In this document: positions 6,578-38,079 of the stretch, piece by piece | Layout of the letters: every line of letters starts with the position of its first letter | How positions within the stretch are numbered: position 1 is the first letter of the stretch | From: Heteronotia binoei | Lineage: Eukaryota | Assembly: GCF_032191835.1 (NCBI RefSeq) | Contig: NC_083223.1 | Span: 84,072,001 to 84,136,000 of the forward strand | Length of the DNA: 64,000 bases | Direction: 5' to 3' | Notes under the pieces: model-generated | The model's input: the letters and a program-made list of their open reading frames with translations, nothing else | What the model was told of the DNA's origin: nothing | Databases searched by the model: none | Position numbers and translations under genes: made by a program

Positions 6578-7170
6578 TGTCACGGCTGGGGCCGGGTCAG
6601 GCAAAGTCCAGAGGCAGTCCGAGGTCTGTAGCCAGTAAGCAGGAGGGTCCGAGGCGCCAAATCCGAATCACTGTAGAAGTATCGCAGGTCTGAGGTCCAG
6701 AAGCCGAGGTCAGGGAGTCCAGAAGTCCAAAGCCAAAGTCAGGGAGTCAGGAACCAAAGTCAAGCCGGAGTGGATGCTAGAATGTCAGGGAGATGACTAG
6801 TTGCTTCCACAAAGCTTCCTCCCAAAGCCCACAGCTATATAGCCCTCTGCTGGCTGTTGCCCGTTTGGGCTAATTGCTGGCTCAGGGAGGCAGCCAGGAT
6901 CCTGTTACCACTCAAGCATCCTTGCTCTTAGAAGGGCCAGAATCCTCTCAGAACTCAGGGCTCAGGGAGCGTCTTGCTTGTGAGCGTGCCGCCCTCCTCC
7001 GATCCCTGAGGTCCTGCCGGAGGCGGTCACGCACACGAGCCACCCGAGAGGGCGAGGCAGGGGGGCTGGGATCTTCTCCAGCAGGAGGCAGGGGCACTGG
7101 TGCAGGTGGCAGGGGCACAGTTTCCTCATCAGACTCAACTTCCTCTGAAGGGTCCCCAGCACCCATGACA
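6578..7170 (-). repeat. 3' LTR of the Gypsy element
   Basis: Copy of 11502-12094; substitutions in ggccgg/ggcctg, gcccgt/gcctgt and gagcgt/gagcat. Confidence 0.97.
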
Positions 7171-10100
7171 CTATCCCCCCCCCCAGGGCCCCCCTCCGTC
7201 GAGGGACCTGGAAGGTCGGGGTGGTCGTTGTGGAACTGGTGCACCAAGTCCGGGGCATGAAGATTGTCCTCGGGCTCCCAAGACCGGTCTTCTGGGCCGT
7301 ATCCCTCCCAGTCCACCAGGTACTGGAGGCCTCCACGATGGTACCGGGAGTCCAGGATCTGGCGCACCTCATATTCTTCCTCGTCATCCACCAACACTGG
7401 TGGTGGCGGCGGTGGGGAAGGAGTCCGAGCTGGGTCAGGGGGTGCAGCCGGAACAAGGAGGGAGCGATGAAACACGGGGTGAATGCGGAGGTGGGGTGGC
7501 AACTGGAGCCTGAAGGCGACGGGGTTTATTTGTTCAACGACGGGGTAGGGTCCAATGAACCGTGCATCCAGCTTGTGAGACCGACCAGGCCGGCGCAGGT
7601 AGCGAGTTGAGAGCCACACCTGATCCCCCGGCTGCACTGGAGGGCCTTCTTGCCTCTTTCGGTCCGCAGCCCGTTTATATGCCTCCTTGGCTTGCTGTAG
7701 CTGCTCTCGGAGCAAGTCTTGGCTGGCACGGAGTTCTTGCAGGTAGGCATCGACGGCGGGGACATTCGTGGGTGGTAGCATCGCTGGGAAGAACCGAGGG
7801 TGGTACCCGTAGGTTGCAGCAAACGGGGTCATTTGGGTGGATGAATGGACCGCGTTGTTGTATGCAAACTCCGCTAGGGGCAATAGAGTGGTCCAGTCAT
7901 CCTGCTGGTAACAGGTGTAACAGCGGAGATATTGCTCTAGCGTGGCATTGGTGCGCTCTGTCTGGCCATCTGTCTGTGGGTGGTAGGCCGAGGACAGGTG
8001 CACTCGAGTACCCAGGCTGGAATGGAGGGCTTGCCAGAACCGAGAGGAGAACTGAGGGCCCCGATCGGAGATCAGATGGGCTGGGAGTCCATGCAGACGA
8101 AAGATGTGTTGCAGGTAAAGCTGGGCCGTCTCCTGAGCTGTGGGGAGTTTCGGGCACGGAACAAAGTGGGCCATCTTGGTAAATAGGTCGACGACCACCC
8201 AGATACAAGTCTGACCCTTGGAGCGTGGAAGTTCCGTGATGAAGTCCATCGAGATGGTATCCCAGGGTCCTGAAGATGTGGGCAAGGGCTGCAGCAACCC
8301 TGAGGGTTTGGCTGGGATGTCTTTGGCCCGTCGGCAGACGTCACAGGAGCTGACATAGCGGGCAACATCAGCGCGAACTCGTGGCCACCAGAATTCCCTT
8401 GTCAGCAAGTGGGTGGTCTTATGCTGTCCAAAGTGCCCGGCGGGTAACGAGTCGTGGGTCAGGCGTAGCACTTCTGCCCGCAAGGGCCCGGGCGGCACAT
8501 AGAGGCGTTCGCGGTGTAGCAAGAGGCCGCCTCGAGTCGTGAACTCCCCTGTTGGGTCATCTTGGAGAGCCTGGAGGTGTTGCTGGACCCAGGGATCATT
8601 GGCCTGGCTAGCCCGAATGTCCTCCACGAGTGCTGGTGAAGTGGAGGTGGCTGCAAATACTGAGGGCGGCAGGATAGGAGCAGCGGGCGCGGTCTCAGTT
8701 GAGGCAGGGGCGTATTCCGGTTTCCGGGAGAGCGCGTCTGCTTTCCGGTTCTGGGTATGGGGGATGTAGGAGATCCGGAAGTCGAAGCGAGAGAAGAATA
8801 GGGACCACCGGATCTGGCGCTGGTTGAGACGGCGGGTGGTCTGGAGGTGTTCCAAGTTCCGGTGATCGGTGAGCACTTGAACAGGGTGGCGAGCCCCTTC
8901 GAGGTAATGTCGCCAAACCTCAAACGCCGCCTTGATCGCGAGCAACTCCCTCTCCCAGATGGTATAGTTCCTCTCTGCAGCAGTGAGCTGCCGCGAGTAA
9001 TAGGCGCAGGGCTGTAGTGGCTGGGACGGCTCCTCGCGCTGGGACAGCACTGCTCCCAGGGCCACGTTGGAGGCATCAGCTTCCACCGTAAAGGGAAGCT
9101 GGGGGTCGGGGTATCTCAGGAGTGGCCCGGTGGCAAAGCGAGTCTTCAGGGTGGAGAAGGCGTTATCGGCCTCTGGGGACCAGTGGGAGGGTTCTTTGGG
9201 GCGGAGTAGTTGAGTCAGGGGTGTGGTCAGGGATGCGTAGGCCGGGATGAATTGCCGATAGTAGTTGGCAAAACCGAGGAACCGCTGCAGGTCTTTGCGA
9301 TTCTGAGGAGCCTGCCAGGTCAGGACCGCTTCTACTTTTTTCGGGTCCATGAGGATCCCCTGCGGTGACACGATGTGCCCAAGGAACTCGACGGAGCGCA
9401 GGTCGAAGTCGCACTTCTCCAGCTTGGCGTAGAGACCATGGGCTCGTAGGCGCTGCAGGACCTGGCGGACGTGCTCGGCGTGCTGCGCAGGATTGCGGGA
9501 GTAAATTAGGATGTCGTCCAGGTATATGATCGCGAAGCGGTCGAGCAGGTCCCGGAATATGTCATTCATGAACCTCTGGAAGACAGCGGGGGCATTGGTC
9601 AGTCCGAAGGGCATTACCAGGTGCTCGTACTGCCCGTATCGGGTCCCAAACGCGGTCTTCCATTTGTCTCCGGGCCGTATGCGCACCAAATTGTACGCTC
9701 CACGGAGGTCCAGCTTGGTGTAGATTTGGGCCCCCTTTAGGCGATCCAAGAGTTCAGGGATCAGTGGTAGAGGGTACCGGTCGCGGATGGTGATCTTGTT
9801 CAGGGCCCGGTAGTCATTGCACAGCCGGAGCTCCCCACTTTTCTTCTTCACGAAGAGCACTGGAGCAGATAGGGGAGAGGTTGAGGGTCGGATGAATCCG
9901 CGTTTCAGGTTCTTGTCCAGGAAGTCTCGCAGAGCTGCCAACTCCGGCTCCGACATTGGGTACAGACGCCCCACCGGGAGTGGTGCCCCAGGTACCAAAT
10001 CAATGGCACAGTCGTAGGGCCGGTGAGGGGGAAGCTGATCAGCTCCTGTCTCTTCAAAGACATCAGCAAAGTCCACATACTTCTGAGGGAGCTGAGGACC

Positions 10101-10634
10101 ACCACTCGGGATGCCAGCTGCTAGAGTGGTGGGAGGAGTCAGATGGGGGCATGGGTCTCGGAAGCGTAGTTCCTGCTGGGCCCAGTCCACGATGGGGTTG
10201 TGCAGCTTCAGCCAGGAAAGGCCTAGAATCAGCGGGAAGCGAGGCATGCGGGCGACATCAAACCGCAGCTGTTCTTGGTGCTGCTGGACGTGGAAGGTGA
10301 TGGGACAGGTCTCCTGGGTGACGGGGCCAGAACGGAGGAGGCGCCCGTCAATAGCCTCCACCAGCGACGGAATCCCTTTTGTCTGCACAGGGATCTGGTG
10401 CTGCTTCACAAAGGCGGCATCTATAAAACAGTGGGCCGCTCCCGAGTCCAGCATGGCATACACGAACAGCCAGCGTTCGTCAGGCAGACGGAGTTTGACT
10501 GGTAGCAGGAATGGCCCTGGGGTATCAGCCCGCTGTTCGGAGGACCCAGCTAGTCGCCCCAGGCTGGGGGGTCCACTTACGCCTGGGGCTGCCCTTTTGG
10601 CGGCGGTGGCAGCGAAGGTCCAGGTATCCGATGC
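6948..10634 (-). CDS. pol: Pol (protease-RT-RNase H-integrase-chromodomain), in the -1 frame relative to gag
   Basis: Protease LDSGA; [10 protein letters not shown]; RNase H EADAS...ERELLAI; integrase HHCC (H-x6-H...C-x2-C) and D,D,E core; GPY/F motif; chromodomain [11 protein letters not shown]...[17 protein letters not shown]. The frame stays open upstream of the listed ORF start (10463) back to a TAA at 10637-10635. Confidence 0.97.
7171..7197 (-). promoter_or_regulatory. Polypurine tract
   Basis: Minus strand GGAGGGGGGCCCTGGGGGGGGGGGGATAG directly abuts the 3' LTR. Confidence 0.85.
10542..10601 (-). promoter_or_regulatory. Putative -1 ribosomal frameshift signal (heptamer plus H-type pseudoknot)
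   Basis: G_CCA_AAA (10601-10595), 5-nt spacer, stem 1 GCCCCAGGC/GCCTGGGGC (10589-10581 with 10564-10556), stem 2 GGACCC/GGGTCC (10574-10569 with 10547-10542). Confidence 0.75.
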
Positions 10635-11467
10635 TTAGCAGGGCAGCCAGAGGCATAGTGGCCTGCCGTGCCGCAGTAGAGGCACAGATTCTGCGTGCGG
10701 CGTCTGGTCTTTTCCTCTGGGGTCAGGCGGGGTCGAGCAGCTCCAAGCTGCATAGGCTCGTCCTTGGTGCTGGTACTAGCTGGGGACGGGCGAGGAGCCA
10801 GGTAGCACGGCGCAGGGAGCTGGCGCCCTCTGGTCTTGGCTTGGCGGCGACTTTCCAGGCGGCCATCGATGCGGAGGCAGAGGGTGATAAGTTCTTGGAG
10901 CGTGGGTGGCTGCTCCACCCTGGCCAGTTCATCCAGGACCTCCTCTGCCAACCCCTCAGTAAACTGGTCCATCTGGGCAGCCTCATTCCACGCCAAGTCC
11001 TGGGTCAGGAGCTTGAATTCAGTGGCATATTGAGCCACCGAGGAGTTGCCTTGTTTCAGTGCCCTGATCTTCCGGTTAGCTGTGGCTGCTTGGACTGGGT
11101 TTGAGAAAGCAGCAGACAGGTGGGCCTCAAACCCCTGGTAATCAGTCAGTAGGGGAGAGGACGCGACCAGTAAGGGTGTGGCCCATTTGGCCGCCTGCCC
11201 CTTTAACAGACCGATGACGAAACACACCTTGGTTTTGTCATTGAGGAAGTCCCGTGCTCTCAGTTCAAAGTACAGCCGACACTGTGCTAGGAAGGCAGGA
11301 AATTCTTCCACGGCACCCCCAAATCTGTCAGGTGGGGGAACTGGGCACTTGGCTGGAGCACTGGCCGCAGGTTGTTGCTGCAAGTGCACTACTGCCTGTG
11401 TTAGCTGCTGTACCTGGGCTTGGAGCGCAGCCAGTAGTTCTGTGGTTTCACTTGCTTCAGCATCCAT
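10577..11467 (-). CDS. gag: Gag (retrotransposon gag/capsid domain plus CCHC zinc knuckle), 296 aa
   Basis: N-terminal coiled coil, PPDRFGG...FLAQC...[17 protein letters not shown] capsid motif as in PEG10/RTL proteins, and [14 protein letters not shown] knuckle. Confidence 0.96.
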
Positions 11468-13326: not shown

Positions 13327-15594
13327 TTGGAAAGGAGTGACAAATGTCACCCCCATCTTTAAAAAAGGGTTCCAGAGGAGATCCGGGAAATTACAGGCCA
13401 GTCAGCCTGACTTCAATACCGGGAAAGTTGGTAGAAAGCATTATCAAGGACAGAATGAGTAGCCACATTGATGAACACAAGTTATTGAGGAATACTCAGC
13501 ATGGGTTCTGTAAGGGAAGATCTTGCCTCACTAACCTGTTACAGTTCTTTGAGGGGGTGAACAAGCATGTGGACAAAGGGGACCCAATAGATGTTGTTTA
13601 CCTTGACTTCCAGAAAGCTTTTGATAAAGTTCCTCATCAAAGGCTCCTTAGTAAGCTCAAGAGTCATGGAGTAAAACGACAAGTCCTCTTGTGGATCAAA
13701 AACTGGCTAATTAATAGGAAGCAGAGAGTGAGTATAAATGGGCAGTCTTCACAGTGGAGGACGATAAGCAGTGGGGTGCCGCAGGGCTCAGTACTGGGTC
13801 CCATGCTCTTTAACTTGTTCATTAATGATCTGGAGTTGGGAGTAAGCAATGAAGTGGCCAAGTTTGCAGATGACACTAAATTGTTTAGGGTGGTGAGAAC
13901 CAGAGAGAATTGTGAGGCACTCCAAAGGGATCTGTTGAAGCTGGGTGAGTGAGCGTCAGCATGGCAGATGAGGTTCAATGTGGCCAAGTGTAAAGTAATG
14001 CACATTGGGGCCAAGAATCCCAGCTACAAATACAAGGTTTTTTTTAATTTAAAAACAAAATTTTATTAATACGCAACATATTGTTACTATACTCTAAAAA
14101 ACCCATAAAAACATTACGTTATAAGAACAATACATTGCACTTTTCATCCCTCCATCTCTCCCCCTTTTCTTGACCCCCACCGGTGTTACTTAAAATTATA
14201 AACAAAAAAAAATACAAGGTAATTTTATCAAATCAAGAATCTTCGTTTTAAAGTTCTGTAACTATAGTTAAAAAAGACAAAGAGAAATATTAAAAAACAA
14301 GGGATAGAAGTAAAGTCTATAAGTCCATCCTTACTTTTTCTCCTTGCATCTTTTATTCTGGAAAGTTATTTTTTTTAAAAAAAATTTTTTAGCCCATTAT
14401 TCCATCACCATTCAGCTGTTATCAAAAATCACAAAATATCCCTTTACCTTCCAGCATTTTTCAACATATTTTTGAAATTTCTCCCATTCTTTTCTACATT
14501 TCTCCATATCATAGTCTTTTAAAATTCTTGTAAGTTTGTCCATGTCACTCCAAGAAATAGTTTTTACAACCCAATCCCATTTTTCTGGTATTTTATCTTG
14601 CTTCCATAACTGCGCATATAATGTCCTTGCTGCTGAAAGCAGATACCACACCAACGTTCTGTCTTGCTTCGGCAAACTTTCCATTTGTAATCCAACAAAA
14701 AAGAGTCTGGAGACCTCTTAATGTCATTCCCTAAGATTTTTACATTTCTTGTTGAATCATTTGCTTAAATTGCTTTGCCTTTTCACATGTTTACCACATA
14801 TGGTAGAAAGCTGATGGGTTGTGAACTGGCAGAGACTGACCAAGAGAGAGATCTTGGGGTCGTGGTAGATAACTCACTGAAAATGTCAAGACAGTGTGCA
14901 ATTGCAATAAAAAAGGCCAACGCCATGCTGGGAATTATTAGGAAGGGAATTGAAAACAAATCAGCCAGTATCATAATGCCCCTGTATAAATCGATGGTGC
15001 GGACTCATTTGGAATACTGTGTACAATTCTGGTCACCGCACCTCAAAAAGGATATTATAGCATTGGAAAAAGTGCAGAAAAGGGCAGCTAGAATGATTAA
15101 AGGTTTGGAACACTTTCCCTATGAAGAAAGGTTAAAACGCTTGGGGCTCTTTAGCTTGGAGAAACATCGACTGCGGGGTGACATGATAGAGGTTTACAAG
15201 ATTATGCATGGGATGGAGAAAATAGAGAAAGAAGTACTTTTCTCCCTTTCTCACAATACAAGAACTCATGGGCATTCAATGAAATTGCTGAGCAGTCAGG
15301 TTAAAATGAATAAAAGGAAGTACTTCTTCACCCAAAGGGTGATTGACATGTGGAATTCACTGCCACAGGAGGTGGTGGCGGCTACAGGCATAGCCAGCTT
15401 TAGATAAAAATATGCAGCAGAGGTCCATCAGTGGCTATTAGCTACAGTATATATATATGTGTATGCGTGTGTATGTGTGTGTGTGTGTGTATATATGTAT
15501 ATATACACACATATATTGGCCACTGTGTGACACAGAGTGTTGGACTGGGTGGGCCATTGGCCTGATCCAACATGGCTTCTCTTATGTTCTTATG
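13327..15594 (+). mobile_element. CR1 LINE (5'-truncated, decayed), interrupted by an L1 fragment
   Basis: RT motifs [37 protein letters not shown]; premature TGA at 13950-13952; ORF resumes near 14811; CR1-type 3' end ttatgttcttatg. Confidence 0.93.
14038..14810 (-). mobile_element. L1-clade LINE 3' fragment inserted antisense into the CR1
   Basis: Minus-strand TFYHMW-TC and LLSAARTLYAQLWK...W L1 ORF2 C-terminal motifs; A-rich tail at the low-coordinate end; CR1 sequence is contiguous across it (tacaag|ctgatgg). Confidence 0.85.
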
Positions 15595-27180: not shown

Positions 27181-30038
27181 ATTATATGCTGATCTACGCA
27201 ACCTTGTACGGAAGACCCCTACAGAGGACAAGGTGATCATCCTTGGCGACTTCAATGCCAGAGTAGGTAAAGACTCGGAAGCCTGGAAAGGAGTACTTGG
27301 CAAACACGGCATTGGCAACTGCAATGATAACGGGCGCCTCCTGCTAGAATTCTGCACGGAGCATCAGCTCACCATCACCAACACTATCTTTCAGCAGAAG
27401 AACAGCCTGAAAACAACCTGGATGCACCCACGGTCCAAGCACTGGCACCTTATCGACTACATTCTGGTGCACCAGAGAGACCTTCGAGATGTCTTACACA
27501 CCCGAGTAATGCCCAGTGCAGAATGTCATACGGATCATCGTCTTGTACGCTGCAATCTCCGTCTTCACTTTAAACCCACACCCAGGAGAGGAGGTATCCC
27601 TCGGAGGAAGCTTCAGGTTGGCAGCCTTCAGTCAGCCGAAGTTAAAGCTGCCTTCCAGGCAAAACTCCAGTCAAGAATTGAGGACCCCAGTTGCCCCACA
27701 GACCCTTCTCCAGAAGCACTCTGGGAACACCTAAAAACTACCATCCTGTCGATCTCTGAAGAAGTCCTCGGGTTCTCCACAAGGAAGAACAAGGACTGGT
27801 TTGACGAGAACAATCAAGAGATCCAAGAATTACTAGCAAAAAAGAGATCTGCCTACCAAGCACACCTTGCTCAGCCCTCCTGTCCCGGGAAAAAAGCAAT
27901 CTTTTGCGCTGCATGTAGCAACCTCCAGCGCAAGCTTCGAGACATTCAGAACGAGTGGTGGACCAAGCTTGCAGAGAGAACCCAGCTGTGTGCAGACACT
28001 GGTGATTTAAGAGGGTTCTACGAAGCCCTGAAGACAGTATATGGCCCAACATATCAGGCTCAGAGTCCCTTGCGTAGTGCAGACGGCCAAGTGCTCCTCA
28101 CAGACAAGGCATCCATACTGAACCGGTGGTCGGAGTATTTTCAGGTTCTCTTCAGTGCCAACCGCGTAGTTCAAGATTCAGCAATCCACCTCACCCCACT
28201 TCAACCAGTGAAAACAGAGTTGGATGAGATCCCCACCCTAGAAGAGACTGTTAAAGCCATCAAGCAACTGAAAAGTGGCAAGGCAGCGGGAGTTGATGGA
28301 ATCCCACCAGAGATCTGGAAGCATGGGGGCACAGTACTACATAGCACACTTCACAAAGTACTTGTCACCTGCTGGGAACAAGGCAAACTACCACAGGACT
28401 TTCGCGATGCAATCATCATCACTCTACACAAGAACAAAGGGGAAAAGTCAGACTGCTCCAACTACCGGGGGATAACCCTGCTCTCCATCGCAGGCAAAAT
28501 CCTTGCCAGAATACTCCTGAACAGACTGGTGCCCACCATTGCAGAAGAACTCCTCCCAGAGAGCCAGTGCGGCTTCAGAGCTAACAGGAGCACCACCGAC
28601 ATGGTATTTGTTCTCAGGCAGCTCCAAGAGAAATGCAGGGAACAGAACAAGGGTCTATATGTGACTTTTGTCGACCTTACCAAAGCTTTTGATACTGTTA
28701 GCAGGAAAGGCCTGTGGCAAATCTTGGAACGTTTAGGATGTCCCCCAAGGTTCCTCAGCATGAACATCCAGCTACATGAAGACCAGCGAGGCCAAGTCAG
28801 ACACTGCAACGACCTCTCGGAGCCCTTCCCAATAGGCACAGGTGTAAAGCAAGGCTGCGTTCTCGCGCCAACTCTCTTTACGATCTTCTTTAGCATGATG
28901 CTTCAAAGAGCCACAGTAGATCTAGATGATGATGATGGTGTCTACATCCGCTATCGCACCGATGGCAGCCTGTTCAACCTGAGGCGACTAAAGGCTCACT
29001 CCAAAACAATGGAAAAACTTATCCGCGAGCTACTGTTTGCTGATGATGCTGCACTCGTCTCCCACTCGATATCAGCTCTGCAGCATATGACGTCCTGCTT
29101 TGCAGAGGCTGCCAAGCTATTCGGCCTGGAAGTTAGTCTGAAGAAGACAAAAGTTCTCCACCAGCCTGCACCCCAGGAAGATTATCACCCTCCCTGCATC
29201 ACTGTGGGTGAATCAGTTCTGAAGACAGTCCAGCAGTTCAGCTACCTGGGGTGCATCATCTCCTCAGAAGCCAAGATCGACAAGGAGATTGACAACAGGC
29301 TGGCAAAGGCAAACCGTGCATATGGCCGACTGCACAAAAGAGTGTGGAGCAACAAGCATCTGAAAAAAGGCATAAAGATCAATGTTTACAAAGCGGTTGT
29401 GATGACAACCCTCATCTACGGCTCCGAATCGTGGGTTTTATACCGTCATCACCTGCGACTCCTTGAGCGCTTTCATCAGCGCTGCCTTCGCACCATCCTC
29501 AACATCCACTGGAGTGACTTTGTGACCAACACTGAAGTCCTCAAGAGGGCAGAGGTTACAAGCATCGAGGCACTGCTGTTGAAGATGCAGCTGCGCTGGG
29601 CAGGGCATATTTCTAGGATGGAAAACCACCGCCTTCCCAAGATTGCTCTGTATGGTGAACTTTCCACCGGCCATCGAAATAGAGGGGCACCAAAGAAGAG
29701 GTACAAGGACTCCTTGAAGAAATCTCTTGGCACCTGTCGCATCAACCATCACCAGTGGTCTGACCTAGCCTCAGATCGCAAAGCATGGAGGCACACCATC
29801 CACCAGGCTGTCTCTTCCTTTGAGAACGCACGCATAGCTGGTCTTGAGGACAAAAGGAGATTGAGGAAGAATCGCACTGCTACAGCACCAACCCCAAATC
29901 AGACTTTTCCCTGCAGCCACTGTGGCCGGATCTGCCTGTCCCACATTGGTCTTGTCAGCCACCAGCGAGCCTGCAGCAGACGTGGACTACTGCACCCTTC
30001 TTAAATCTTCATTCGCGAAGTCAAGCCGAGAGAGAGAG
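27181..30038 (+). mobile_element. RTE-clade LINE, 5'-truncated, young
   Basis: 12-bp TSD ATATGGTGACAT (27169-27180, 30039-30050); (GA)n tail; short 3' UTR. Confidence 0.95.
27182..30004 (+). CDS. RTE ORF (partial AP endonuclease, RT and C-terminal Cys/His motif), stop-free
   Basis: IILGDFNARVG, TWMHPRSKHWHLIDY, TDHRLV; RT motifs FVDLTKAFDTV, GVKQG, LFADD, FSYLG; FPCSHC...H...C at the C-terminus. The frame is open 17 codons upstream of the listed start. Confidence 0.93.
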   Translation, partial: LYADLRNLVRKTPTEDKVIILGDFNARVGKDSEAWKGVLGKHGIGNCNDNGRLLLEFCTEHQLTITNTIFQQKNSLKTTWMHPRSKHWHLIDYILVHQRDLRDVLHTRVMPSAECHTDHRLVRCNLRLHFKPTPRRGGIPRRKLQVGSLQSAEVKAAFQAKLQSRIEDPSCPTDPSPEALWEHLKTTILSISEEVLGFSTRKNKDWFDENNQEIQELLAKKRSAYQAHLAQPSCPGKKAIFCAACSNLQRKLRDIQNEWWTKLAERTQLCADTGDLRGFYEALKTVYGPTYQAQSPLRSADGQVLLTDKASILNRWSEYFQVLFSANRVVQDSAIHLTPLQPVKTELDEIPTLEETVKAIKQLKSGKAAGVDGIPPEIWKHGGTVLHSTLHKVLVTCWEQGKLPQDFRDAIIITLHKNKGEKSDCSNYRGITLLSIAGKILARILLNRLVPTIAEELLPESQCGFRANRSTTDMVFVLRQLQEKCREQNKGLYVTFVDLTKAFDTVSRKGLWQILERLGCPPRFLSMNIQLHEDQRGQVRHCNDLSEPFPIGTGVKQGCVLAPTLFTIFFSMMLQRATVDLDDDDGVYIRYRTDGSLFNLRRLKAHSKTMEKLIRELLFADDAALVSHSISALQHMTSCFAEAAKLFGLEVSLKKTKVLHQPAPQEDYHPPCITVGESVLKTVQQFSYLGCIISSEAKIDKEIDNRLAKANRAYGRLHKRVWSNKHLKKGIKINVYKAVVMTTLIYGSESWVLYRHHLRLLERFHQRCLRTILNIHWSDFVTNTEVLKRAEVTSIEALLLKMQLRWAGHISRMENHRLPKIALYGELSTGHRNRGAPKKRYKDSLKKSLGTCRINHHQWSDLASDRKAWRHTIHQAVSSFENARIAGLEDKRRLRKNRTATAPTPNQTFPCSHCGRICLSHIGLVSHQRACSRRGLLHPS

Positions 30039-33900: not shown

Positions 33901-34542
33901 ACTTTCCCACACTATTGATGAATATGGTTCTTACATTATTATTTGGCCAGGCAGACGATAGCCAACCCAGTTTCCAACTTTGTCAGAAGCAACATTTCAG
34001 CATGTTCTTTCCTATGTAGTTCACATTTTTAATGCGAAAAAGAAAAAGAAAAAAAAAAGAATGAGAAAATCTAGTTGTATTTCTATTCTCTCACCCGTCC
34101 AGACCCTGTTTATATCATTGAGCTAAGTACAATTTCAGCAATGCAGTGAAAACTACAAAACCAGAGGCATGCAATGCTCCAGCTTAAAAAGCATTCACAT
34201 GACACTGGCAGAGCTGTGTTGTGGCTTTGCTGTATGCACATGGGATGGCAAATGCGATTTAAAAGCACAAAAGAGATGTGCAGACCCTCCTCTGACCACC
34301 TTTCTTTCTGCGCTGCCTTCCGATGAACGTCTCTCCTGTGAGACTTGCTTCTGCTAGTGGATCCTGGCAGGCTAAGAAAAGATATGCAGGAACAAGAGCA
34401 ATGGGCAGGTTCAGCATATCATACTCTTGTCACCCTTTCACACTTTTGTCTACATCAGGTGTGTCCAACCTTTTGGCTTCCCTGGGCCATATTGGAAGAA
34501 GAAGAAATGTCTTTGGCCGCAGATAAAATACACAAACACTAA

Positions 34543-35207
34543 AAACAGGTTGCTTACCTGTAACTGATGATCTTCGAGTGGTCATCTGTGCAGTCACACA
34601 CATGGGTCTTGCCACAGGCAACGGATCCGTACCTCGGAGTTCTAATAGCTCGCCTATAGCGCTTTTTGGCGCGCTTCCCTCCCGCTCTGGGGAGCAGGCA
34701 CCGACTGTGCATGCCTGGAGCGAGGGGGAGGCGCCATTCCCACTCAGTTTCTTCCAGCCGCCACTGACACTCAGTAGAGGTAAGTATAAAGCAGAGGAGG
34801 CCAGCAGCGGGGAAGGCTGGGTGGGCGTGTGTGACTGCACAGATGACCACTCGAAGATCATCAGTTACAGGTAAGCAACCTGTTTATCTTCTTCGTGGTC
34901 TCTGTGCAGTCCCACACATGGGTGATTAGCCAGCTAAATGGTCCTGGAGGAGGGTGCTGGTCAAAAAGAGGAAAGGAATAAGAGGATTTAAAGAATTTAA
35001 AGAAGAATACGATACCGACAGGAACAGACGAACTAGAGAGGAGCGCAACAAGGTAGGTGTTGTCCGGGCAGCGGAAAGGAAGCGCGCCAGAGCAGGAGGG
35101 AAGCGCGCCAAAAAAAGCTATAGGCGAGCTATTAGAACTCCGAGGTATGGATCCGTTGCCTGCGGCAAGACCCATGTGTGGGACTGCACAGAGACCACGA
35201 AGAAGAT
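34543..35207 (-). mobile_element. Non-autonomous DIRS1-type (tyrosine-recombinase retrotransposon) mini-element, 665 bp
   Basis: ITRs (about 34596-34690 vs 35087-35180, about 95% identical); ICR 34827-34923 made of perfect complements of both termini (59 bp and 38 bp) joined end to end; terminal extension on one ITR; no TSD; no RT or YR ORF. Confidence 0.88.
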
Positions 35208-35278
35208 TGATAGTTGATGATAAGCTAAAAAATGTCCATGCATAATTTCCGTAATATCTGCCACCACATATAAGCAGA

Positions 35279-35719
35279 AGGGGGGGGATCAATAAAAAAA
35301 TCATTCCATCCCTCCCAGAAACACAGGGCCTTAATGTCCTTTCTGCTTCCAAGTTTTGCTGCAGATGGCCCAGAGCTGAAGCAGGAACCATGCCACATAG
35401 GCCCCACAAGGCCCAGACCAGACCACAGTGAAACACAAAGGGGGGGGGGGGTCAGTAAAAAAAAAAATATCCTATCCCTCCCAGAAACACAAGGCCTTAA
35501 TGTCCTTTCTGCTTCCAAGTTTTGCTGCAGATGGCCCAGAGCTGAAGCAGGAACCATGCCACATAGGCCCCACAAGGCCCAGACCAGACCACAGTGAAAC
35601 ACAAAGGGGGGGGGGGTCAGTAAAAAAAAAAATCCTATCCCTCCCAGAAACACAAGGCCTTAATGTCCTTTCTGCTTCCAAGTTCTGCTGCAGATGGCTC
35701 AGAGCTGAAACAGGAACCA
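35279..35719. repeat. Tandem repeat, 163-166-bp unit, about 2.7 copies
   Basis: atccctcccagaaacac recurs at 35308, 35474 and 35637; the copies are nearly identical apart from G/A homopolymer lengths. Confidence 0.93.
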
Positions 35720-38079
35720 GGCCAGGCAATGCACTAAGCCAGGAGTAGGACTGGGAAAGATCCAGCCTGGGGTAAGCAGCAGACAGCAGCAGACTACCAG
35801 GCTCCCTCAGTCATCCACCCCAACAATAAAAGAAAAATAACCCTTAACATCAGAAAATGTGCCAATATGGTGCCTGCCAGAAGCAAACAAGAACCAGGCT
35901 GGACTGCAGCAAGCCCCACCACAAGCCCAGACAACTATAGTGACCTCCACAATAACCTCCACAAGATCACCCCCCCCTCCGCTCTCACTCTCTTACCTGG
36001 TGTCCAGAGAGGCTTACTGCAGGCTGCACACAGAATAGGAACACTGAAAATGTGGAACAGGCTCTGCTGGCTGGCAAATAAGAGAGGCTCAACTAGGTTG
36101 CAATGCCATCACTACTGCTAGTAGAATGTATTTGGCGGGCCTCAATGTCAATGTTGTGTAAAGCCCGCCTACTCTTAAAACTGCCCATTTGAGAGCCTGA
36201 TCCACTATGACAGCACTTTACACCAACAAATGGGGATATATCCAGGAGAAAATGGGGGGGGGGGGGTCAACCACTCCGCCTTCCTCATCATGAGTGGTTG
36301 TTATAAGGGAGCCCTACGCTGAATCTTTCCCTCCCAGCCAGCATAGCCCACCTACTGCTCAAACTCCTCCTTCCCCGTTCTCAGGAAGATGCTTTCTGAT
36401 TCTTGTTTCCTTTAAGAATGATCATTGAGAAATGGAGAGCAGAGCCGTGAAGGAACTTAAGTTTCAAGCACAACAAGCAAATAACCTTTAAATGTCCTTT
36501 GCTTTCCAGAGAAAATAGTTTGTTTGGTTTCCTTTGCCTGATCCCAAATTCTGTAGCTGCATGCTCCTCTCTGCACTATGTTTGTTTCTTTCGCATAGGT
36601 AAGAATGGTCTCCTTACACAAAGTATTTATGAGTACTTTGGTTAGCAGAAACAAAAGGAGGAGCAAACTGCTCATTTGAAGGTGTGAGGCAGTCTGTGAG
36701 GGACTCGGGCTTTTCTCCTCCTCCTTCCTGATTTGTCATTCTCCCAGCCCAATTTAATCCAGCATTGTCTGCTTAGCACCAACAGTGATACAAATGCAGG
36801 GTTCAGAGGGGGCTGCGGGAACTGAGGCTGCAGAGGGGGTAACTATGGTGTTGGGTGGAAGAGACATTTGTTTTGCTCTGTTCCAAACCATGCCTCTAAA
36901 TTTCCAACAGAGGAAGGGAAATCATTGCTCCCTCTGCATGCCCTCTCTCAGGGGCTTGGAGTAGAGGAGAGGGGAGGGAGTAGGCAATTTTTTTTTCACA
37001 CCAGCCCCTGCTTCCCAATGGAAGCTTGCTTTTTGTTGACATACACAGGCTGGCTTTTAAAGCTGTCCTGAGAGCAGAAGACTCTCAGGAGCAAGAAAAA
37101 AAAGGGGTGGGTGGGTGGTTTCCTTTGATTTGTTTTTAAAGCAGGACTTTTTTCCCTACATGCTTTTTAAAAATCCTCTCTCTCCAGAGACTTTGGGGGG
37201 ACACCACCTGTTTCTGTGTGTTTCTTTTCCAGTCCCAGCTACAGAGAAGGGTAAGGGGATTCTGGAACTCCCACATTGAAGAGATGGAGGGCGGATGCAA
37301 CAGAATCCACCTGAGGCAGTGGAGCATCTCCATTTTGGGGACAGCAAGCCCAGCTCCACCACACACACCCCACCTCCAACCCTCACAGAGAGGCCAGCAG
37401 CCCCGACAGGGAAAACTCCCACCCCACCCGCCTACCCAGGAGCTTGGGAGGCTGGCTCTGCTACTTCCCAACTTTTCCAGAGATGGGCCCACAGCCACCC
37501 GATACCTCCAGAGCACAGCCTAGGTCTCTTTGTCCTGGGTGGGAGATCCAGAGGGGACAGAGCAAGAAGAGCTGGAGAGCGCCCAGGAGCAAAGGAAGAG
37601 CACTCACACACACATGCTCTGAATCAGCTCTGGCGCTCTCTCTGGTGGCAGGAGAAAAATGCAACCAGATGTAGCCTCAGTCTCAGGATTTGCTGCCACT
37701 GCAGCACCCAGTTCCAGGTGCTGTTTTAAGAAAGTTTATGAGTTCGTGTTGGGGCCACATTCAAATCAATCCTGGGCCAAAGGTTGGACAAGCTTGGTCT
37801 ACATGTATGTGCTCTACATTTACCCCTGCTGAGCTCAAGAATATTAAGCACAACTTGCCAGCTAAGCCTTCCAGAATTCCAACTTCAGCAGACTGCAAAT
37901 CTCCTTAAACTCTAATGCTGTCTTGTGCTGGCAATAGAGTCACTCTGGTAAGTGAGCAATCATACCCTTAACCAATCCTGACCCTCTCCATGTCTTATGA
38001 CACAGCACAGTTCCTTCTGTACTGTTGAGTAAAATAATTTATGCCATTACCTGGAAAGTGTTATACCTGCAGTTACCTA

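What the first reader, a model, noticed from the sequence alone, without database searches (positions are those of the whole stretch)
34543..35207. 665-bp coding-free mini-DIRS that keeps every replication and circularisation signal
Seen: two ITRs; an ICR (34827-34923) made of a perfect 59-bp complement of one terminus (34543-34601) joined directly to a perfect 38-bp complement of the other (35170-35207); a ~24-nt extension on one ITR; no ORFs. The ICR seam (...GAAGAAGAT|AAACAGG...) predicts both ends exactly. Independently, removing 34543-35207 restores the host hAT arm (cactaa|tgatag) with no TSD. Established: DIRS1 elements use ITR-ICR pairing to make a circular intermediate that a tyrosine recombinase integrates without TSD. 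Inference: this is a minimal element mobilised in trans, a MITE/TRIM analogue of DIRS, and the unmutated ICR-terminus matches suggest a recent insertion. Non-autonomous DIRS are known in fish, but I do not know of a description of one this minimal in squamates.
Basis: partly seen in the sequence, partly recalled or inferred. Interest (0 to 1): 0.75.

Follow-up and report, generated by a model that had tools for sequence, protein, structure and literature searches.

The report
Non-coding 665-bp DIRS retrotransposon remnant
A 665-base piece of a DIRS-type jumping gene has lost all its genes but keeps every repeat it would need to be copied and pasted by a helper element. Whether it ever moved in this short form could not be tested here.

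Summary
34543-35207 has imperfect inverted terminal repeats (120/117 nt, 92.5%). It also has a 97-nt internal complementary region (ICR, 34827-34923) that is exactly rc(34543-34601)+rc(35170-35207). One end has a 28-nt extension. There is no target-site duplication and nothing coding or RNA-family-like.

The sizes match published Anolis DIRS1-like elements: extension 28 (26-28), divergent ITR 27 (26), ICR 38-59 (39-60, 40-58), junction AAA. By that match the canonical sense strand is the window's minus strand.

The element sits 87 bp inside a 3.3-kb hAT transposon with TIRs and an 8-bp TSD.

Three points are not shown:
- that it is one copy of a trans-mobilised family rather than a one-off deletion;
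- that an autonomous partner shares its ends;
- that the empty site exists.

I sent nothing from those places to any search tool afterwards.

"Recent insertion" is only weakly supported. The ITR arms differ at 5 of 83 positions, four of them at CpG. A CpG-aware model gives P=0.07 for a clean ICR.

Other first-stage notes report two more miniature DIRS elsewhere in this genome; they are unchecked.

Verdict: a real non-autonomous DIRS derivative, a new member of a known kind.

The parts
35087..35207 (-). Left terminus in canonical (minus-strand) orientation, the left ITR. The outer 27 nt (35181-35207) are the 'divergent ITR'; the rest is the 'conserved ITR'.
   Evidence: Gapped ITR alignment 34571-34690 vs 35087-35203, 92.5%. 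The outermost 38 nt are perfectly complementary to 34886-34923.
34924..35086 (-). 163-nt segment between the left ITR and the ICR. It is the presumed 5' leader and the place where about 5 kb of gag-pol-YR should sit, so the deletion junction probably lies here. Its inner ITR edge carries a 21-nt tandem duplication (35070-35110).
   Evidence: No ATG on the sense strand, and 75% purine on the + strand at 34950-35030. Direct repeat D2. No Pfam hit for its ORFs. The position of the junction is an inference.
34886..34923 (-). Left ICR (38 nt), complementary to the element's canonical 5' end 35170-35207.
   Evidence: 100% complementary over 38 nt (I3).
34827..34885 (-). Right ICR (59 nt), complementary to the canonical 3' end 34543-34601 including the 28-nt extension. 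The seam with the left ICR is the circle junction GAAGAT|AAACAGG, of the junction-triplet-AAA type.
   Evidence: 100% complementary over 59 nt. Seam and junction read directly. Sizes compared with Table 3 of PMC3266345.
34691..34826 (-). 136-nt spacer between the ICR and the right ITR.
   Evidence: No similarity to the other spacer and no repeat elsewhere in the window. No coding or RNA-family signal.
34571..34690 (-). Right ITR in canonical orientation.
   Evidence: A four-way conserved core, TCTGTGCAGTC[A/C]CACAC, is present in both ITRs and both ICR halves (D1, D3, I5).
34543..34570 (-). Right extension (rE, 28 nt). It is complementary only to the ICR and holds a hairpin of 6 bp with a 5-nt loop (34545-34561), 2 nt from the element's end.
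   Evidence: It lies outside the ITR alignment but inside the ICR match. The hairpin appears in both minimum-free-energy folds.
34456..37796 (.). Host element: a 3.3-kb non-autonomous hAT-type DNA transposon into which the mini-DIRS is inserted, 87 bp from its left end.
   Evidence: Terminal inverted repeat 34451-34473 / 37779-37801 (I4). 8-bp TSD at 34448-34455 = 37797-37804. An internal 166-bp tandem repeat lies at 35280-35724.

Best explanation
34543-35207 is an internally deleted, non-coding derivative of a DIRS1-like tyrosine-recombinase retrotransposon, of the architectural type described in Anolis. It lies in reverse orientation in the window. It keeps the complete set of repeats that DIRS replication uses: both ITRs, the 28-nt right extension, and a two-part ICR that is the exact complement of the joined ends. 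Shown here: the repeats, their exact geometry, the absence of genes, the absence of a TSD, and the insertion inside a hAT. Inferred from the published DIRS-1 model and experiments: (1) an RNA is made from the element that lacks the outermost parts of both termini; (2) reverse transcriptase from an autonomous DIRS, supplied in trans, copies it; (3) in the single-stranded cDNA the ICR pairs with both ends, so up to 38 nt at one end and 59 nt at the other can be rebuilt, and the ends are held side by side at GAAGAT|AAACAGG; (4) the resulting circle is recombined into the chromosome by the helper's tyrosine recombinase, leaving no duplication. The rE hairpin is a candidate snap-back primer. Whether this copy travelled as a 665-bp unit (about 50% in my estimate) or lost its interior once, during reverse transcription or after insertion, is not settled. 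The confidence given below is for the identity and anatomy, not for trans-mobilisation.
For: The 59+38 ICR identity and sharp borders are exact, and the terminal motifs are unique in the window with 0 expected by chance. ITRs are 92.5% complementary. The single strand folds far better than shuffles: z=-24 as DNA, z=-21 as RNA. Architecture against Table 3 of PMC3266345, AcDIRS1 / AcDIRS2 versus here: rE 26 / 28 vs 28; divergent ITR 26 / 26 vs 27; ICR 40-58 / 39-60 vs 38-59; junction AAG / AAA vs AAA. The four-way conserved core of at least 10 nt described there is also present. The ICR topology is the same as in DIRS-1, which has 33+55 (PMC7192593). The ICR was shown to be essential for DIRS-1 retrotransposition, and its RT acts in trans on a truncated element (PMC7192593). 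There are no genes and no TSD. CpG observed/expected is 0.69 in the element against 0.28 in the window, so it is younger than its surroundings.
Against: I could fetch no homologous full-length DIRS, so descent from a DIRS rests on architecture alone, not on sequence homology to a coding element. The conserved ITR is shorter (about 93 nt) than in AcDIRS1/2 (136-140) and is not strictly complementary (5 of 83 mismatches). The 5' flanking triplet (TCA in sense orientation) does not match the junction triplet, so the published 3-bp homology rule is only half met. In the Dictyostelium assay the truncated element gave cDNA, but a full transposition cycle was not demonstrated.
Confidence: 0.85

Rival explanations
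1. It is one copy of a propagating family of miniature non-autonomous DIRS. The 665-bp unit itself is transcribed, reverse-transcribed and integrated repeatedly by proteins of an autonomous DIRS, as a DIRS counterpart of TRIM elements or mini-Ty1.
For: All known cis signals are kept and about 5 kb of coding sequence is removed, the pattern expected of a unit selected for mobilisability. RT acts in trans in DIRS-1. Non-autonomous DIRS exist elsewhere. Two other first-stage notes report miniature DIRS of 570 bp and 265 bp elsewhere in this genome; these are unchecked leads. RNA contigs of two metatranscriptome runs hold 17-21% of the sampled words of 34143-35279; which part they hold is unknown.
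Against: No second copy was seen in the window, in protein-handle searches, or in metagenome, genome or viral collections. None of these covers the source genome, so this is absence of a test, not of copies.
Confidence: 0.45
2. It is a one-off. A full-length DIRS copy lost its interior once, either by RT template switching while this copy was made or by a genomic deletion after insertion. The mini form never transposed.
For: It is a single copy in 64 kb. The ITR arms have already diverged (5/83; 4 of 9 CpG positions), so there has been time for a deletion. Genomes rich in DIRS hold many damaged copies: 775 detected sequences in Anolis, and 'deleted copies' are discussed (PMC3266345). The scan read very many windows, so a rare lucky deletion can be picked up by selection.
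Against: A random deletion must fall between the left ITR and the ICR and spare both within about 160 nt. That is a small share of possible deletions. Reports of other miniature DIRS in the same genome fit a recurrent class better, if they hold.
Confidence: 0.4
3. It is cargo of the hAT. The 665-bp unit was captured or inserted once in an ancestor of this hAT family and has since been spread, if at all, by hAT transposase rather than by DIRS proteins.
For: It lies 87 bp inside a non-autonomous hAT with intact TIRs and TSD. A first-stage note calls that hAT a composite 'pack' element.
Against: This does not explain the element's own origin, which still needs a DIRS integration. CpG o/e is 0.69 in the element against 0.28 in the window, which suggests it is younger than typical surrounding DNA. 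The age of the hAT itself was not measured.
Confidence: 0.1
4. It is not DIRS-derived at all: a foldback or palindromic rearrangement that mimics ITR/ICR geometry by chance.
For: No sequence homology to a coding DIRS was shown. The ICR is exactly centred (284+97+284 nt), which is odd.
Against: Two adjacent perfect complements of exactly the two ends, a one-sided extension, and sizes within 1-2 nt of published Anolis DIRS are not what a simple palindrome gives. The two spacers share no complementarity.
Confidence: 0.03

Closest known systems
AcDIRS1 / AcDIRS2, DIRS1-like retrotransposons of Anolis carolinensis (Piednoel et al. 2011, PMC3266345, Table 3)
   Same: ITRs with a divergent outer part (26 nt; here 27) and a conserved inner part. 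A right extension only (26-28 nt; here 28). A two-part ICR of 40-58 / 39-60 nt (here 38-59). Junction triplet AAA in AcDIRS2. No TSD.
   Different: Those are 5.9-6.0 kb and encode gag, RT-RH-MT and YR; this is 665 bp with no genes. The conserved ITR is about 93 nt here against 136-140. Sequence identity to them was not tested because no sequence was available.
DIRS-1 of Dictyostelium discoideum (PMC7192593)
   Same: The ICR is the complement of the left end followed by the complement of the right end (33+55 there, 38+59 here in sense orientation). There is a hairpin near the 3' end. The ICR is shown to be essential, and RT acts in trans.
   Different: It is a distant host with 4.8 kb, three ORFs and much longer LTR-like ITRs. 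Its truncated derivative was engineered, and a complete transposition cycle was not shown for it.
TOC1 of Chlamydomonas reinhardtii and zebrafish 'DIRS-N1' (PMC9940879; PMC5400779)
   Same: Both are non-autonomous members of the DIRS order that depend on proteins of other elements.
   Different: From my own knowledge TOC1 is several kb and of a different terminal type. For DIRS-N1 only the name was found in the library, not its structure. I found no published description of a sub-kilobase, ORF-free ITR-ICR-ITR unit, but the library excludes Repbase and most subscription journals.
mini-Ty1 / TRIM / LARD (non-autonomous LTR retrotransposon derivatives)
   Same: The logic is the same: only the terminal cis sequences are kept and the proteins come in trans. 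Mini-Ty1 needs 380 nt of the 5' end and 357 nt of the 3' end, as cited in PMC7192593.
   Different: Those use direct LTRs, a tRNA primer-binding site and a DDE integrase with a TSD. This uses inverted repeats plus an ICR and presumably a tyrosine recombinase, without a TSD.

Membership tests
DIRS1-like retrotransposons (ITR/ICR type) | Inverted terminal repeats, which may be imperfect | tested here: met
   34571-34690 vs 35087-35203, 92.5%
DIRS1-like retrotransposons (ITR/ICR type) | Two adjacent internal complementary regions, one complementary to the start and one to the end of the element | tested here: met
   34827-34923 = rc(34543-34601)+rc(35170-35207), 97/97
DIRS1-like retrotransposons (ITR/ICR type) | A terminal extension complementary only to the ICR (a right extension in animals) | tested here: met
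   The 28 nt at 34543-34570 lie outside the ITR alignment and inside the ICR match. This sets the canonical orientation to the minus strand.
DIRS1-like retrotransposons (ITR/ICR type) | Divergent and conserved ITR parts, with a core of at least 10 nt shared by both ITRs and both ICRs | tested here: met
   A 17-nt core with one variable base is present four times (D1, D3, I5). However, the conserved part is not strictly complementary (5/83).
DIRS1-like retrotransposons (ITR/ICR type) | No target-site duplication | tested here: met
   The flanks ...CACTAA and TGATAG... share nothing at the junction. The empty site itself was not seen.
DIRS1-like retrotransposons (ITR/ICR type) | The element begins and ends with a triplet complementary to the 3-bp circular junction | tested here: inconclusive
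   The junction can be read as AAA and the sense 3' end is TTT, but the 5' flanking triplet is TCA. Published consensus elements also show one deviant end: AcDIRS2 TTT/TGT.
DIRS1-like retrotransposons (ITR/ICR type) | Encodes gag, RT-RNase H-methyltransferase and a tyrosine recombinase | tested here: not met
   No ORF over 98 aa, and no Pfam or homologue hits. It can therefore only be a non-autonomous derivative, not an autonomous member.
DIRS1-like retrotransposons (ITR/ICR type) | Sequence homology of the termini to a coding DIRS family in the same genome | not testable with these tools
   The window holds no DIRS. The source genome is not in the searchable collections: one search gave no self hit, and searches found nothing real.
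Trans-mobilised non-autonomous TE family (TRIM/MITE-like) | Several copies at independent loci that share the same internal structure and ends | not testable with these tools
There is only one copy in the window.
Trans-mobilised non-autonomous TE family (TRIM/MITE-like) | An autonomous partner with matching terminal and ICR sequences | not testable with these tools
   As above.
hAT DNA transposon (the host element) | Terminal inverted repeats and an 8-bp target-site duplication | tested here: met
   I4. The 8-bp duplication is at 34448-34455 = 37797-37804. There is no transposase ORF inside, so it is non-autonomous.

The most novel reading that the evidence does not exclude
This genome carries an actively propagating class of sub-kilobase, gene-free DIRS units (ITR, about 160 nt, ICR, about 140 nt, ITR). 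They would be natural 'mini-DIRS' that define the minimal cis requirements of tyrosine-recombinase retrotransposition in a vertebrate, and a DIRS counterpart of TRIMs and MITEs not yet described in the literature I could search.
Probability: 0.4. Interest if true: 0.6.

Novelty: new member of a known kind. Interest (0 to 1): 0.35.

Why it matters
DIRS elements are the least understood retrotransposon order. How reverse transcription is primed, whether a circle is really made, and what the recombinase recognises are still open, and the only experimental system is Dictyostelium. A natural element stripped to 665 bp that keeps the ITRs, the extension and the ICR gives an upper bound on the cis sequences a vertebrate DIRS needs. 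It is also a ready-made donor for a helper/donor assay. If it proves multicopy, repeat annotators would need to look for ORF-free ITR-ICR-ITR units, which protein-based DIRS finders miss by design. If it is a lone deletion product, it is an ordinary decayed copy.

Tried and rejected
So there is no depth, no skipping reads and no RNA ends.
2. Spurious ORFs inside the element as handles to fetch other copies: no hits.
3. The neighbouring LINE ORF as a handle to fetch the same locus from other assemblies: the best hits are 80% identical and there is no self hit, so the source genome is not in that collection.
4. The 20-nt circle junction in JGI metagenomes gave five hits, all bare 20-22-nt chance matches on blastn. 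The same junction in IMG/VR gave none.
5. A 22-nt ITR core gave no hit in GTDB genomes or IMG/VR.
6. A DIRS protein in the window as a bridge to the autonomous partner: none exists. The RTs present are Ty3-type (6948-10463) and LINE-type (27233-30004, 13344-13952).
7. Rfam and tRNA scans found nothing meaningful.
8. The idea that the + strand TATAAA (34785) and GGTAAGT (34779) left of the ICR are a promoter and a splice donor: set aside, because the terminal architecture puts the sense strand on the other strand.
9. Reading the perfect ICR as proof of a very recent insertion: rejected after the CpG-aware comparison.
10. I recall from memory that MER30-type hAT consensus sequences read through CACTAA-TGATAG, but memory is not a test.

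Full report
OBSERVATION

I read 34300-35450 and ran repeat detection. A script then confirmed that the reverse complement of 34543-34601 (59 nt), followed directly by the reverse complement of 35170-35207 (38 nt), is identical to 34827-34923 at 97 of 97 positions.

Pairing cannot be extended by a single base at either border. Base 34542 and base 35208 would both mispair with the ICR. So the internal seam fixes the element's ends at 34543 and 35207.

The 28-30-nt terminal motifs occur only at their terminus and in the ICR within the 64-kb window, with none expected in 100 shuffles.

The ITRs are 111 nt at 93% without gaps. With two small gaps they are 120/117 nt at 92.5%: 34571-34690 against 35087-35203. 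This leaves 28 unpaired nt at 34543-34570 and 4 nt at 35204-35207.

Nothing inside looks coding:
- The longest ORFs are 98 aa.
- They have no Pfam match even at E<=1.
- They have no relatives in the word-indexed protein search.
- Rfam gives only far-sub-threshold noise, and there is no tRNA.

CONTEXT

The element is single-copy in the window. It lies 87 bp inside a 3.3-kb unit, 34456-37796, which has terminal inverted repeats (I4). An 8-bp duplication sits at 34448-34455 and 37797-37804. This is a non-autonomous hAT-type transposon, as another first-stage note on this window also says. It holds a 166-bp tandem repeat at 35280-35724.

The flanks of the 665-bp element share no base at the junction, so there is no TSD.

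The window contains no DIRS genes. Its reverse transcriptases are a Ty3/chromovirus (6948-11467) and two LINEs (27233-30004; 13344-13952).

WHAT IT IS

The geometry is the hallmark of ITR-type DIRS elements: inverted ends plus an internal segment complementary to the two ends placed side by side (PMC8969392; PMC7192593).

The match to published vertebrate elements is quantitative. Table 3 of Piednoel et al. (PMC3266345) gives these values for the two annotated Anolis carolinensis families:

| Feature | AcDIRS1 / AcDIRS2 | This element |
|---|---|---|
| Left extension | none / none | 4 unpaired nt at that end |
| Right extension | 26 / 28 nt | 28 nt |
| Divergent ITR | 26 / 26 nt | 27 nt (the last arm-to-arm mismatch in the ICR-templated part is at position 27) |
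| ICR | 40-58 / 39-60 nt | 38-59 nt |
| Junction triplet | AAG / AAA | can be read as AAA |

That paper also describes a core of at least 10 nt shared by both ITRs and both ICR halves. Here a 17-nt core occurs four times with one variable base (D1, D3, I5).

In animals only right extensions have been reported, and the second ICR half is always the longer one. The element therefore lies in reverse orientation: its canonical sense strand is the window's minus strand. I hold this at about 85%. It rests on architecture only. The ICR is exactly centred (284+97+284 nt), so its position gives no help.

In sense orientation the order is:
1. left ITR, 35207-35087
2. 163-nt segment without any ATG, 35086-34924
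3. ICR, 34923-34827
4. 136-nt spacer, 34826-34691
5. right ITR, 34690-34571
6. right extension, 34570-34543

The roughly 5 kb of gag, pol and recombinase genes of a full element should sit between the left ITR and the ICR. The deletion junction is therefore most likely inside the 163-nt segment. That is an inference.

HOW IT WOULD WORK

Established for DIRS-1 (PMC7192593):
- The transcript is shorter than the element.
- The ICR is essential for retrotransposition.
- The endogenous reverse transcriptase makes cDNA from a truncated element lacking gag and RT, so it acts in trans.
- Transformed cDNA can be integrated by endogenous proteins.

Applied here, as inference: an RNA from the mini element is copied by a helper's RT. 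In the single-stranded cDNA the ICR pairs with both termini and serves as template and splint. Up to 38 nt of one end and 59 nt of the other can be rebuilt, and the ends abut at GAAGAT|AAACAGG. The circle is then integrated by the helper's tyrosine recombinase without a TSD.

Folding supports the physical plausibility. The single strand folds with z=-24 (DNA) and z=-21 (RNA) relative to shuffles, with the ITR stem, an ICR hairpin and a separate small terminal hairpin. That small hairpin (6 bp, 5-nt loop, 34545-34561) lies in the right extension, 2 nt from the sense 3' end. [quoted passage not shown] This is a lead, not a finding.

The published rule says integration uses a triplet shared by the junction and the target. 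It is only half met here: the sense 3' end is TTT, but the 5' flanking triplet is TCA.

AGE

In intact elements the conserved ITR parts are strictly complementary. Here the 83 nt of ITR that the ICR does not template show 5 mismatches. Four of them fall at 4 of the 9 CpG positions.

If those arose after insertion, the element is not brand new. The ICR/termini contain only two CpG positions. The chance that they stayed clean at the same CpG and non-CpG rates is 0.07; a uniform rate gives 0.002.

Alternatively, the ITR differences were inherited from the master copy because both inner ITRs are transcribed. In that case only the ICR dates the insertion: 0 of 97, which bounds pairwise divergence at roughly 3%.

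CpG observed/expected is 0.69 in the element against 0.28 in the window, so it is younger than its surroundings. I conclude 'relatively young'. 'Recent' is not shown.

FAMILY OR ONE-OFF

- The sequencing-run index found no run with half of the stretch. The best holders were metatranscriptome contigs with 14-21% of the sampled words.
For the same reason I did not search for the empty hAT site.
- Using ORFs inside the element as protein handles found nothing.
- A neighbouring LINE ORF showed that the source genome is not in the protein collection: the best identity was 80% and there was no self hit.
- Exact-pattern scans gave only chance 20-mers in metagenomes and nothing in GTDB genomes or IMG/VR. 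None of these collections would be expected to hold a reptile genome.

Earlier first-stage notes on other pieces of this genome list a '~570-bp miniature non-coding DIRS with the complete ITR-ICR-ITR scaffold' and a '265-bp miniature DIRS', as well as intact DIRS. They are unchecked AI notes, and the index found no sequence look-alike to my element (that blank means nothing). If they hold, short DIRS derivatives recur in this genome, which favours a class over an accident.

My estimates are about 45% for a propagating mini family, about 40% for a one-off deletion (at reverse transcription or later), and about 10% for spread only as hAT cargo.

COMPARISON AND NOVELTY

Non-autonomous DIRS are known: TOC1 in Chlamydomonas (PMC9940879) and a zebrafish repeat named DIRS-N1 (PMC5400779). 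Full-text searches for miniature, mini, truncated or non-autonomous DIRS returned no description of a sub-kilobase gene-free ITR-ICR-ITR unit. The library lacks Repbase and most subscription journals, so this is weak evidence of novelty.

As it stands this is a new member of a known kind, a non-autonomous DIRS derivative. Its value is as a natural pointer to the minimal cis requirements. It would rise to a new variant if it is shown to be multicopy.

Noticed in passing
window 27233-30004 (+): A LINE ORF of 923 aa (endonuclease plus RT). Its closest database proteins are only 76-80% identical yet come from amphioxus, carp, medaka, shrimps, a mantis shrimp, a sea urchin and aquatic metagenome contigs. 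Such cross-phylum similarity suggests a horizontally spreading LINE clade.
   Followed up: no
window 6948-11467 (-): An apparently intact Ty3/chromovirus: a gag ORF (296 aa) and a pol ORF of 1171 aa with protease, RT, RNase H, integrase, SH3 and chromodomain. Other first-stage notes on this window concern it.
   Followed up: no
window 34456-37796: A 3.3-kb non-autonomous hAT with an 8-bp TSD (34448-34455 = 37797-37804). It hosts the mini-DIRS and a 166-bp tandem repeat of 2.7 copies at 35280-35724.
   Followed up: partly
window 34543-35207: The ICR is exactly centred: 284 nt, 97 nt, 284 nt, although the two spacers (136 and 163 nt) are unrelated in sequence. This may be coincidence; it is unexplained.
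   Followed up: partly
window 34950-35030 (+) and 34779-34790 (+): A tract that is 75% purine on the + strand between the ICR and the ITR at the window's right, and a GGTAAGT plus TATAAA pair just left of the ICR. Both are antisense under the orientation I assign. If the element's sense strand were the + strand they would look like a polypurine tract and a promoter or splice donor.
   Followed up: partly
window 13344-13952 (+): An RT fragment of CR1/L2-like LINE type, 28% identical to the RT of the other LINE in the window.
   Followed up: partly
window 35070-35110: A 21-nt tandem duplication (85% identical) of the inner edge of the ITR, so the opposite ITR's inner end can pair in two registers (D2, I4).
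   Followed up: no
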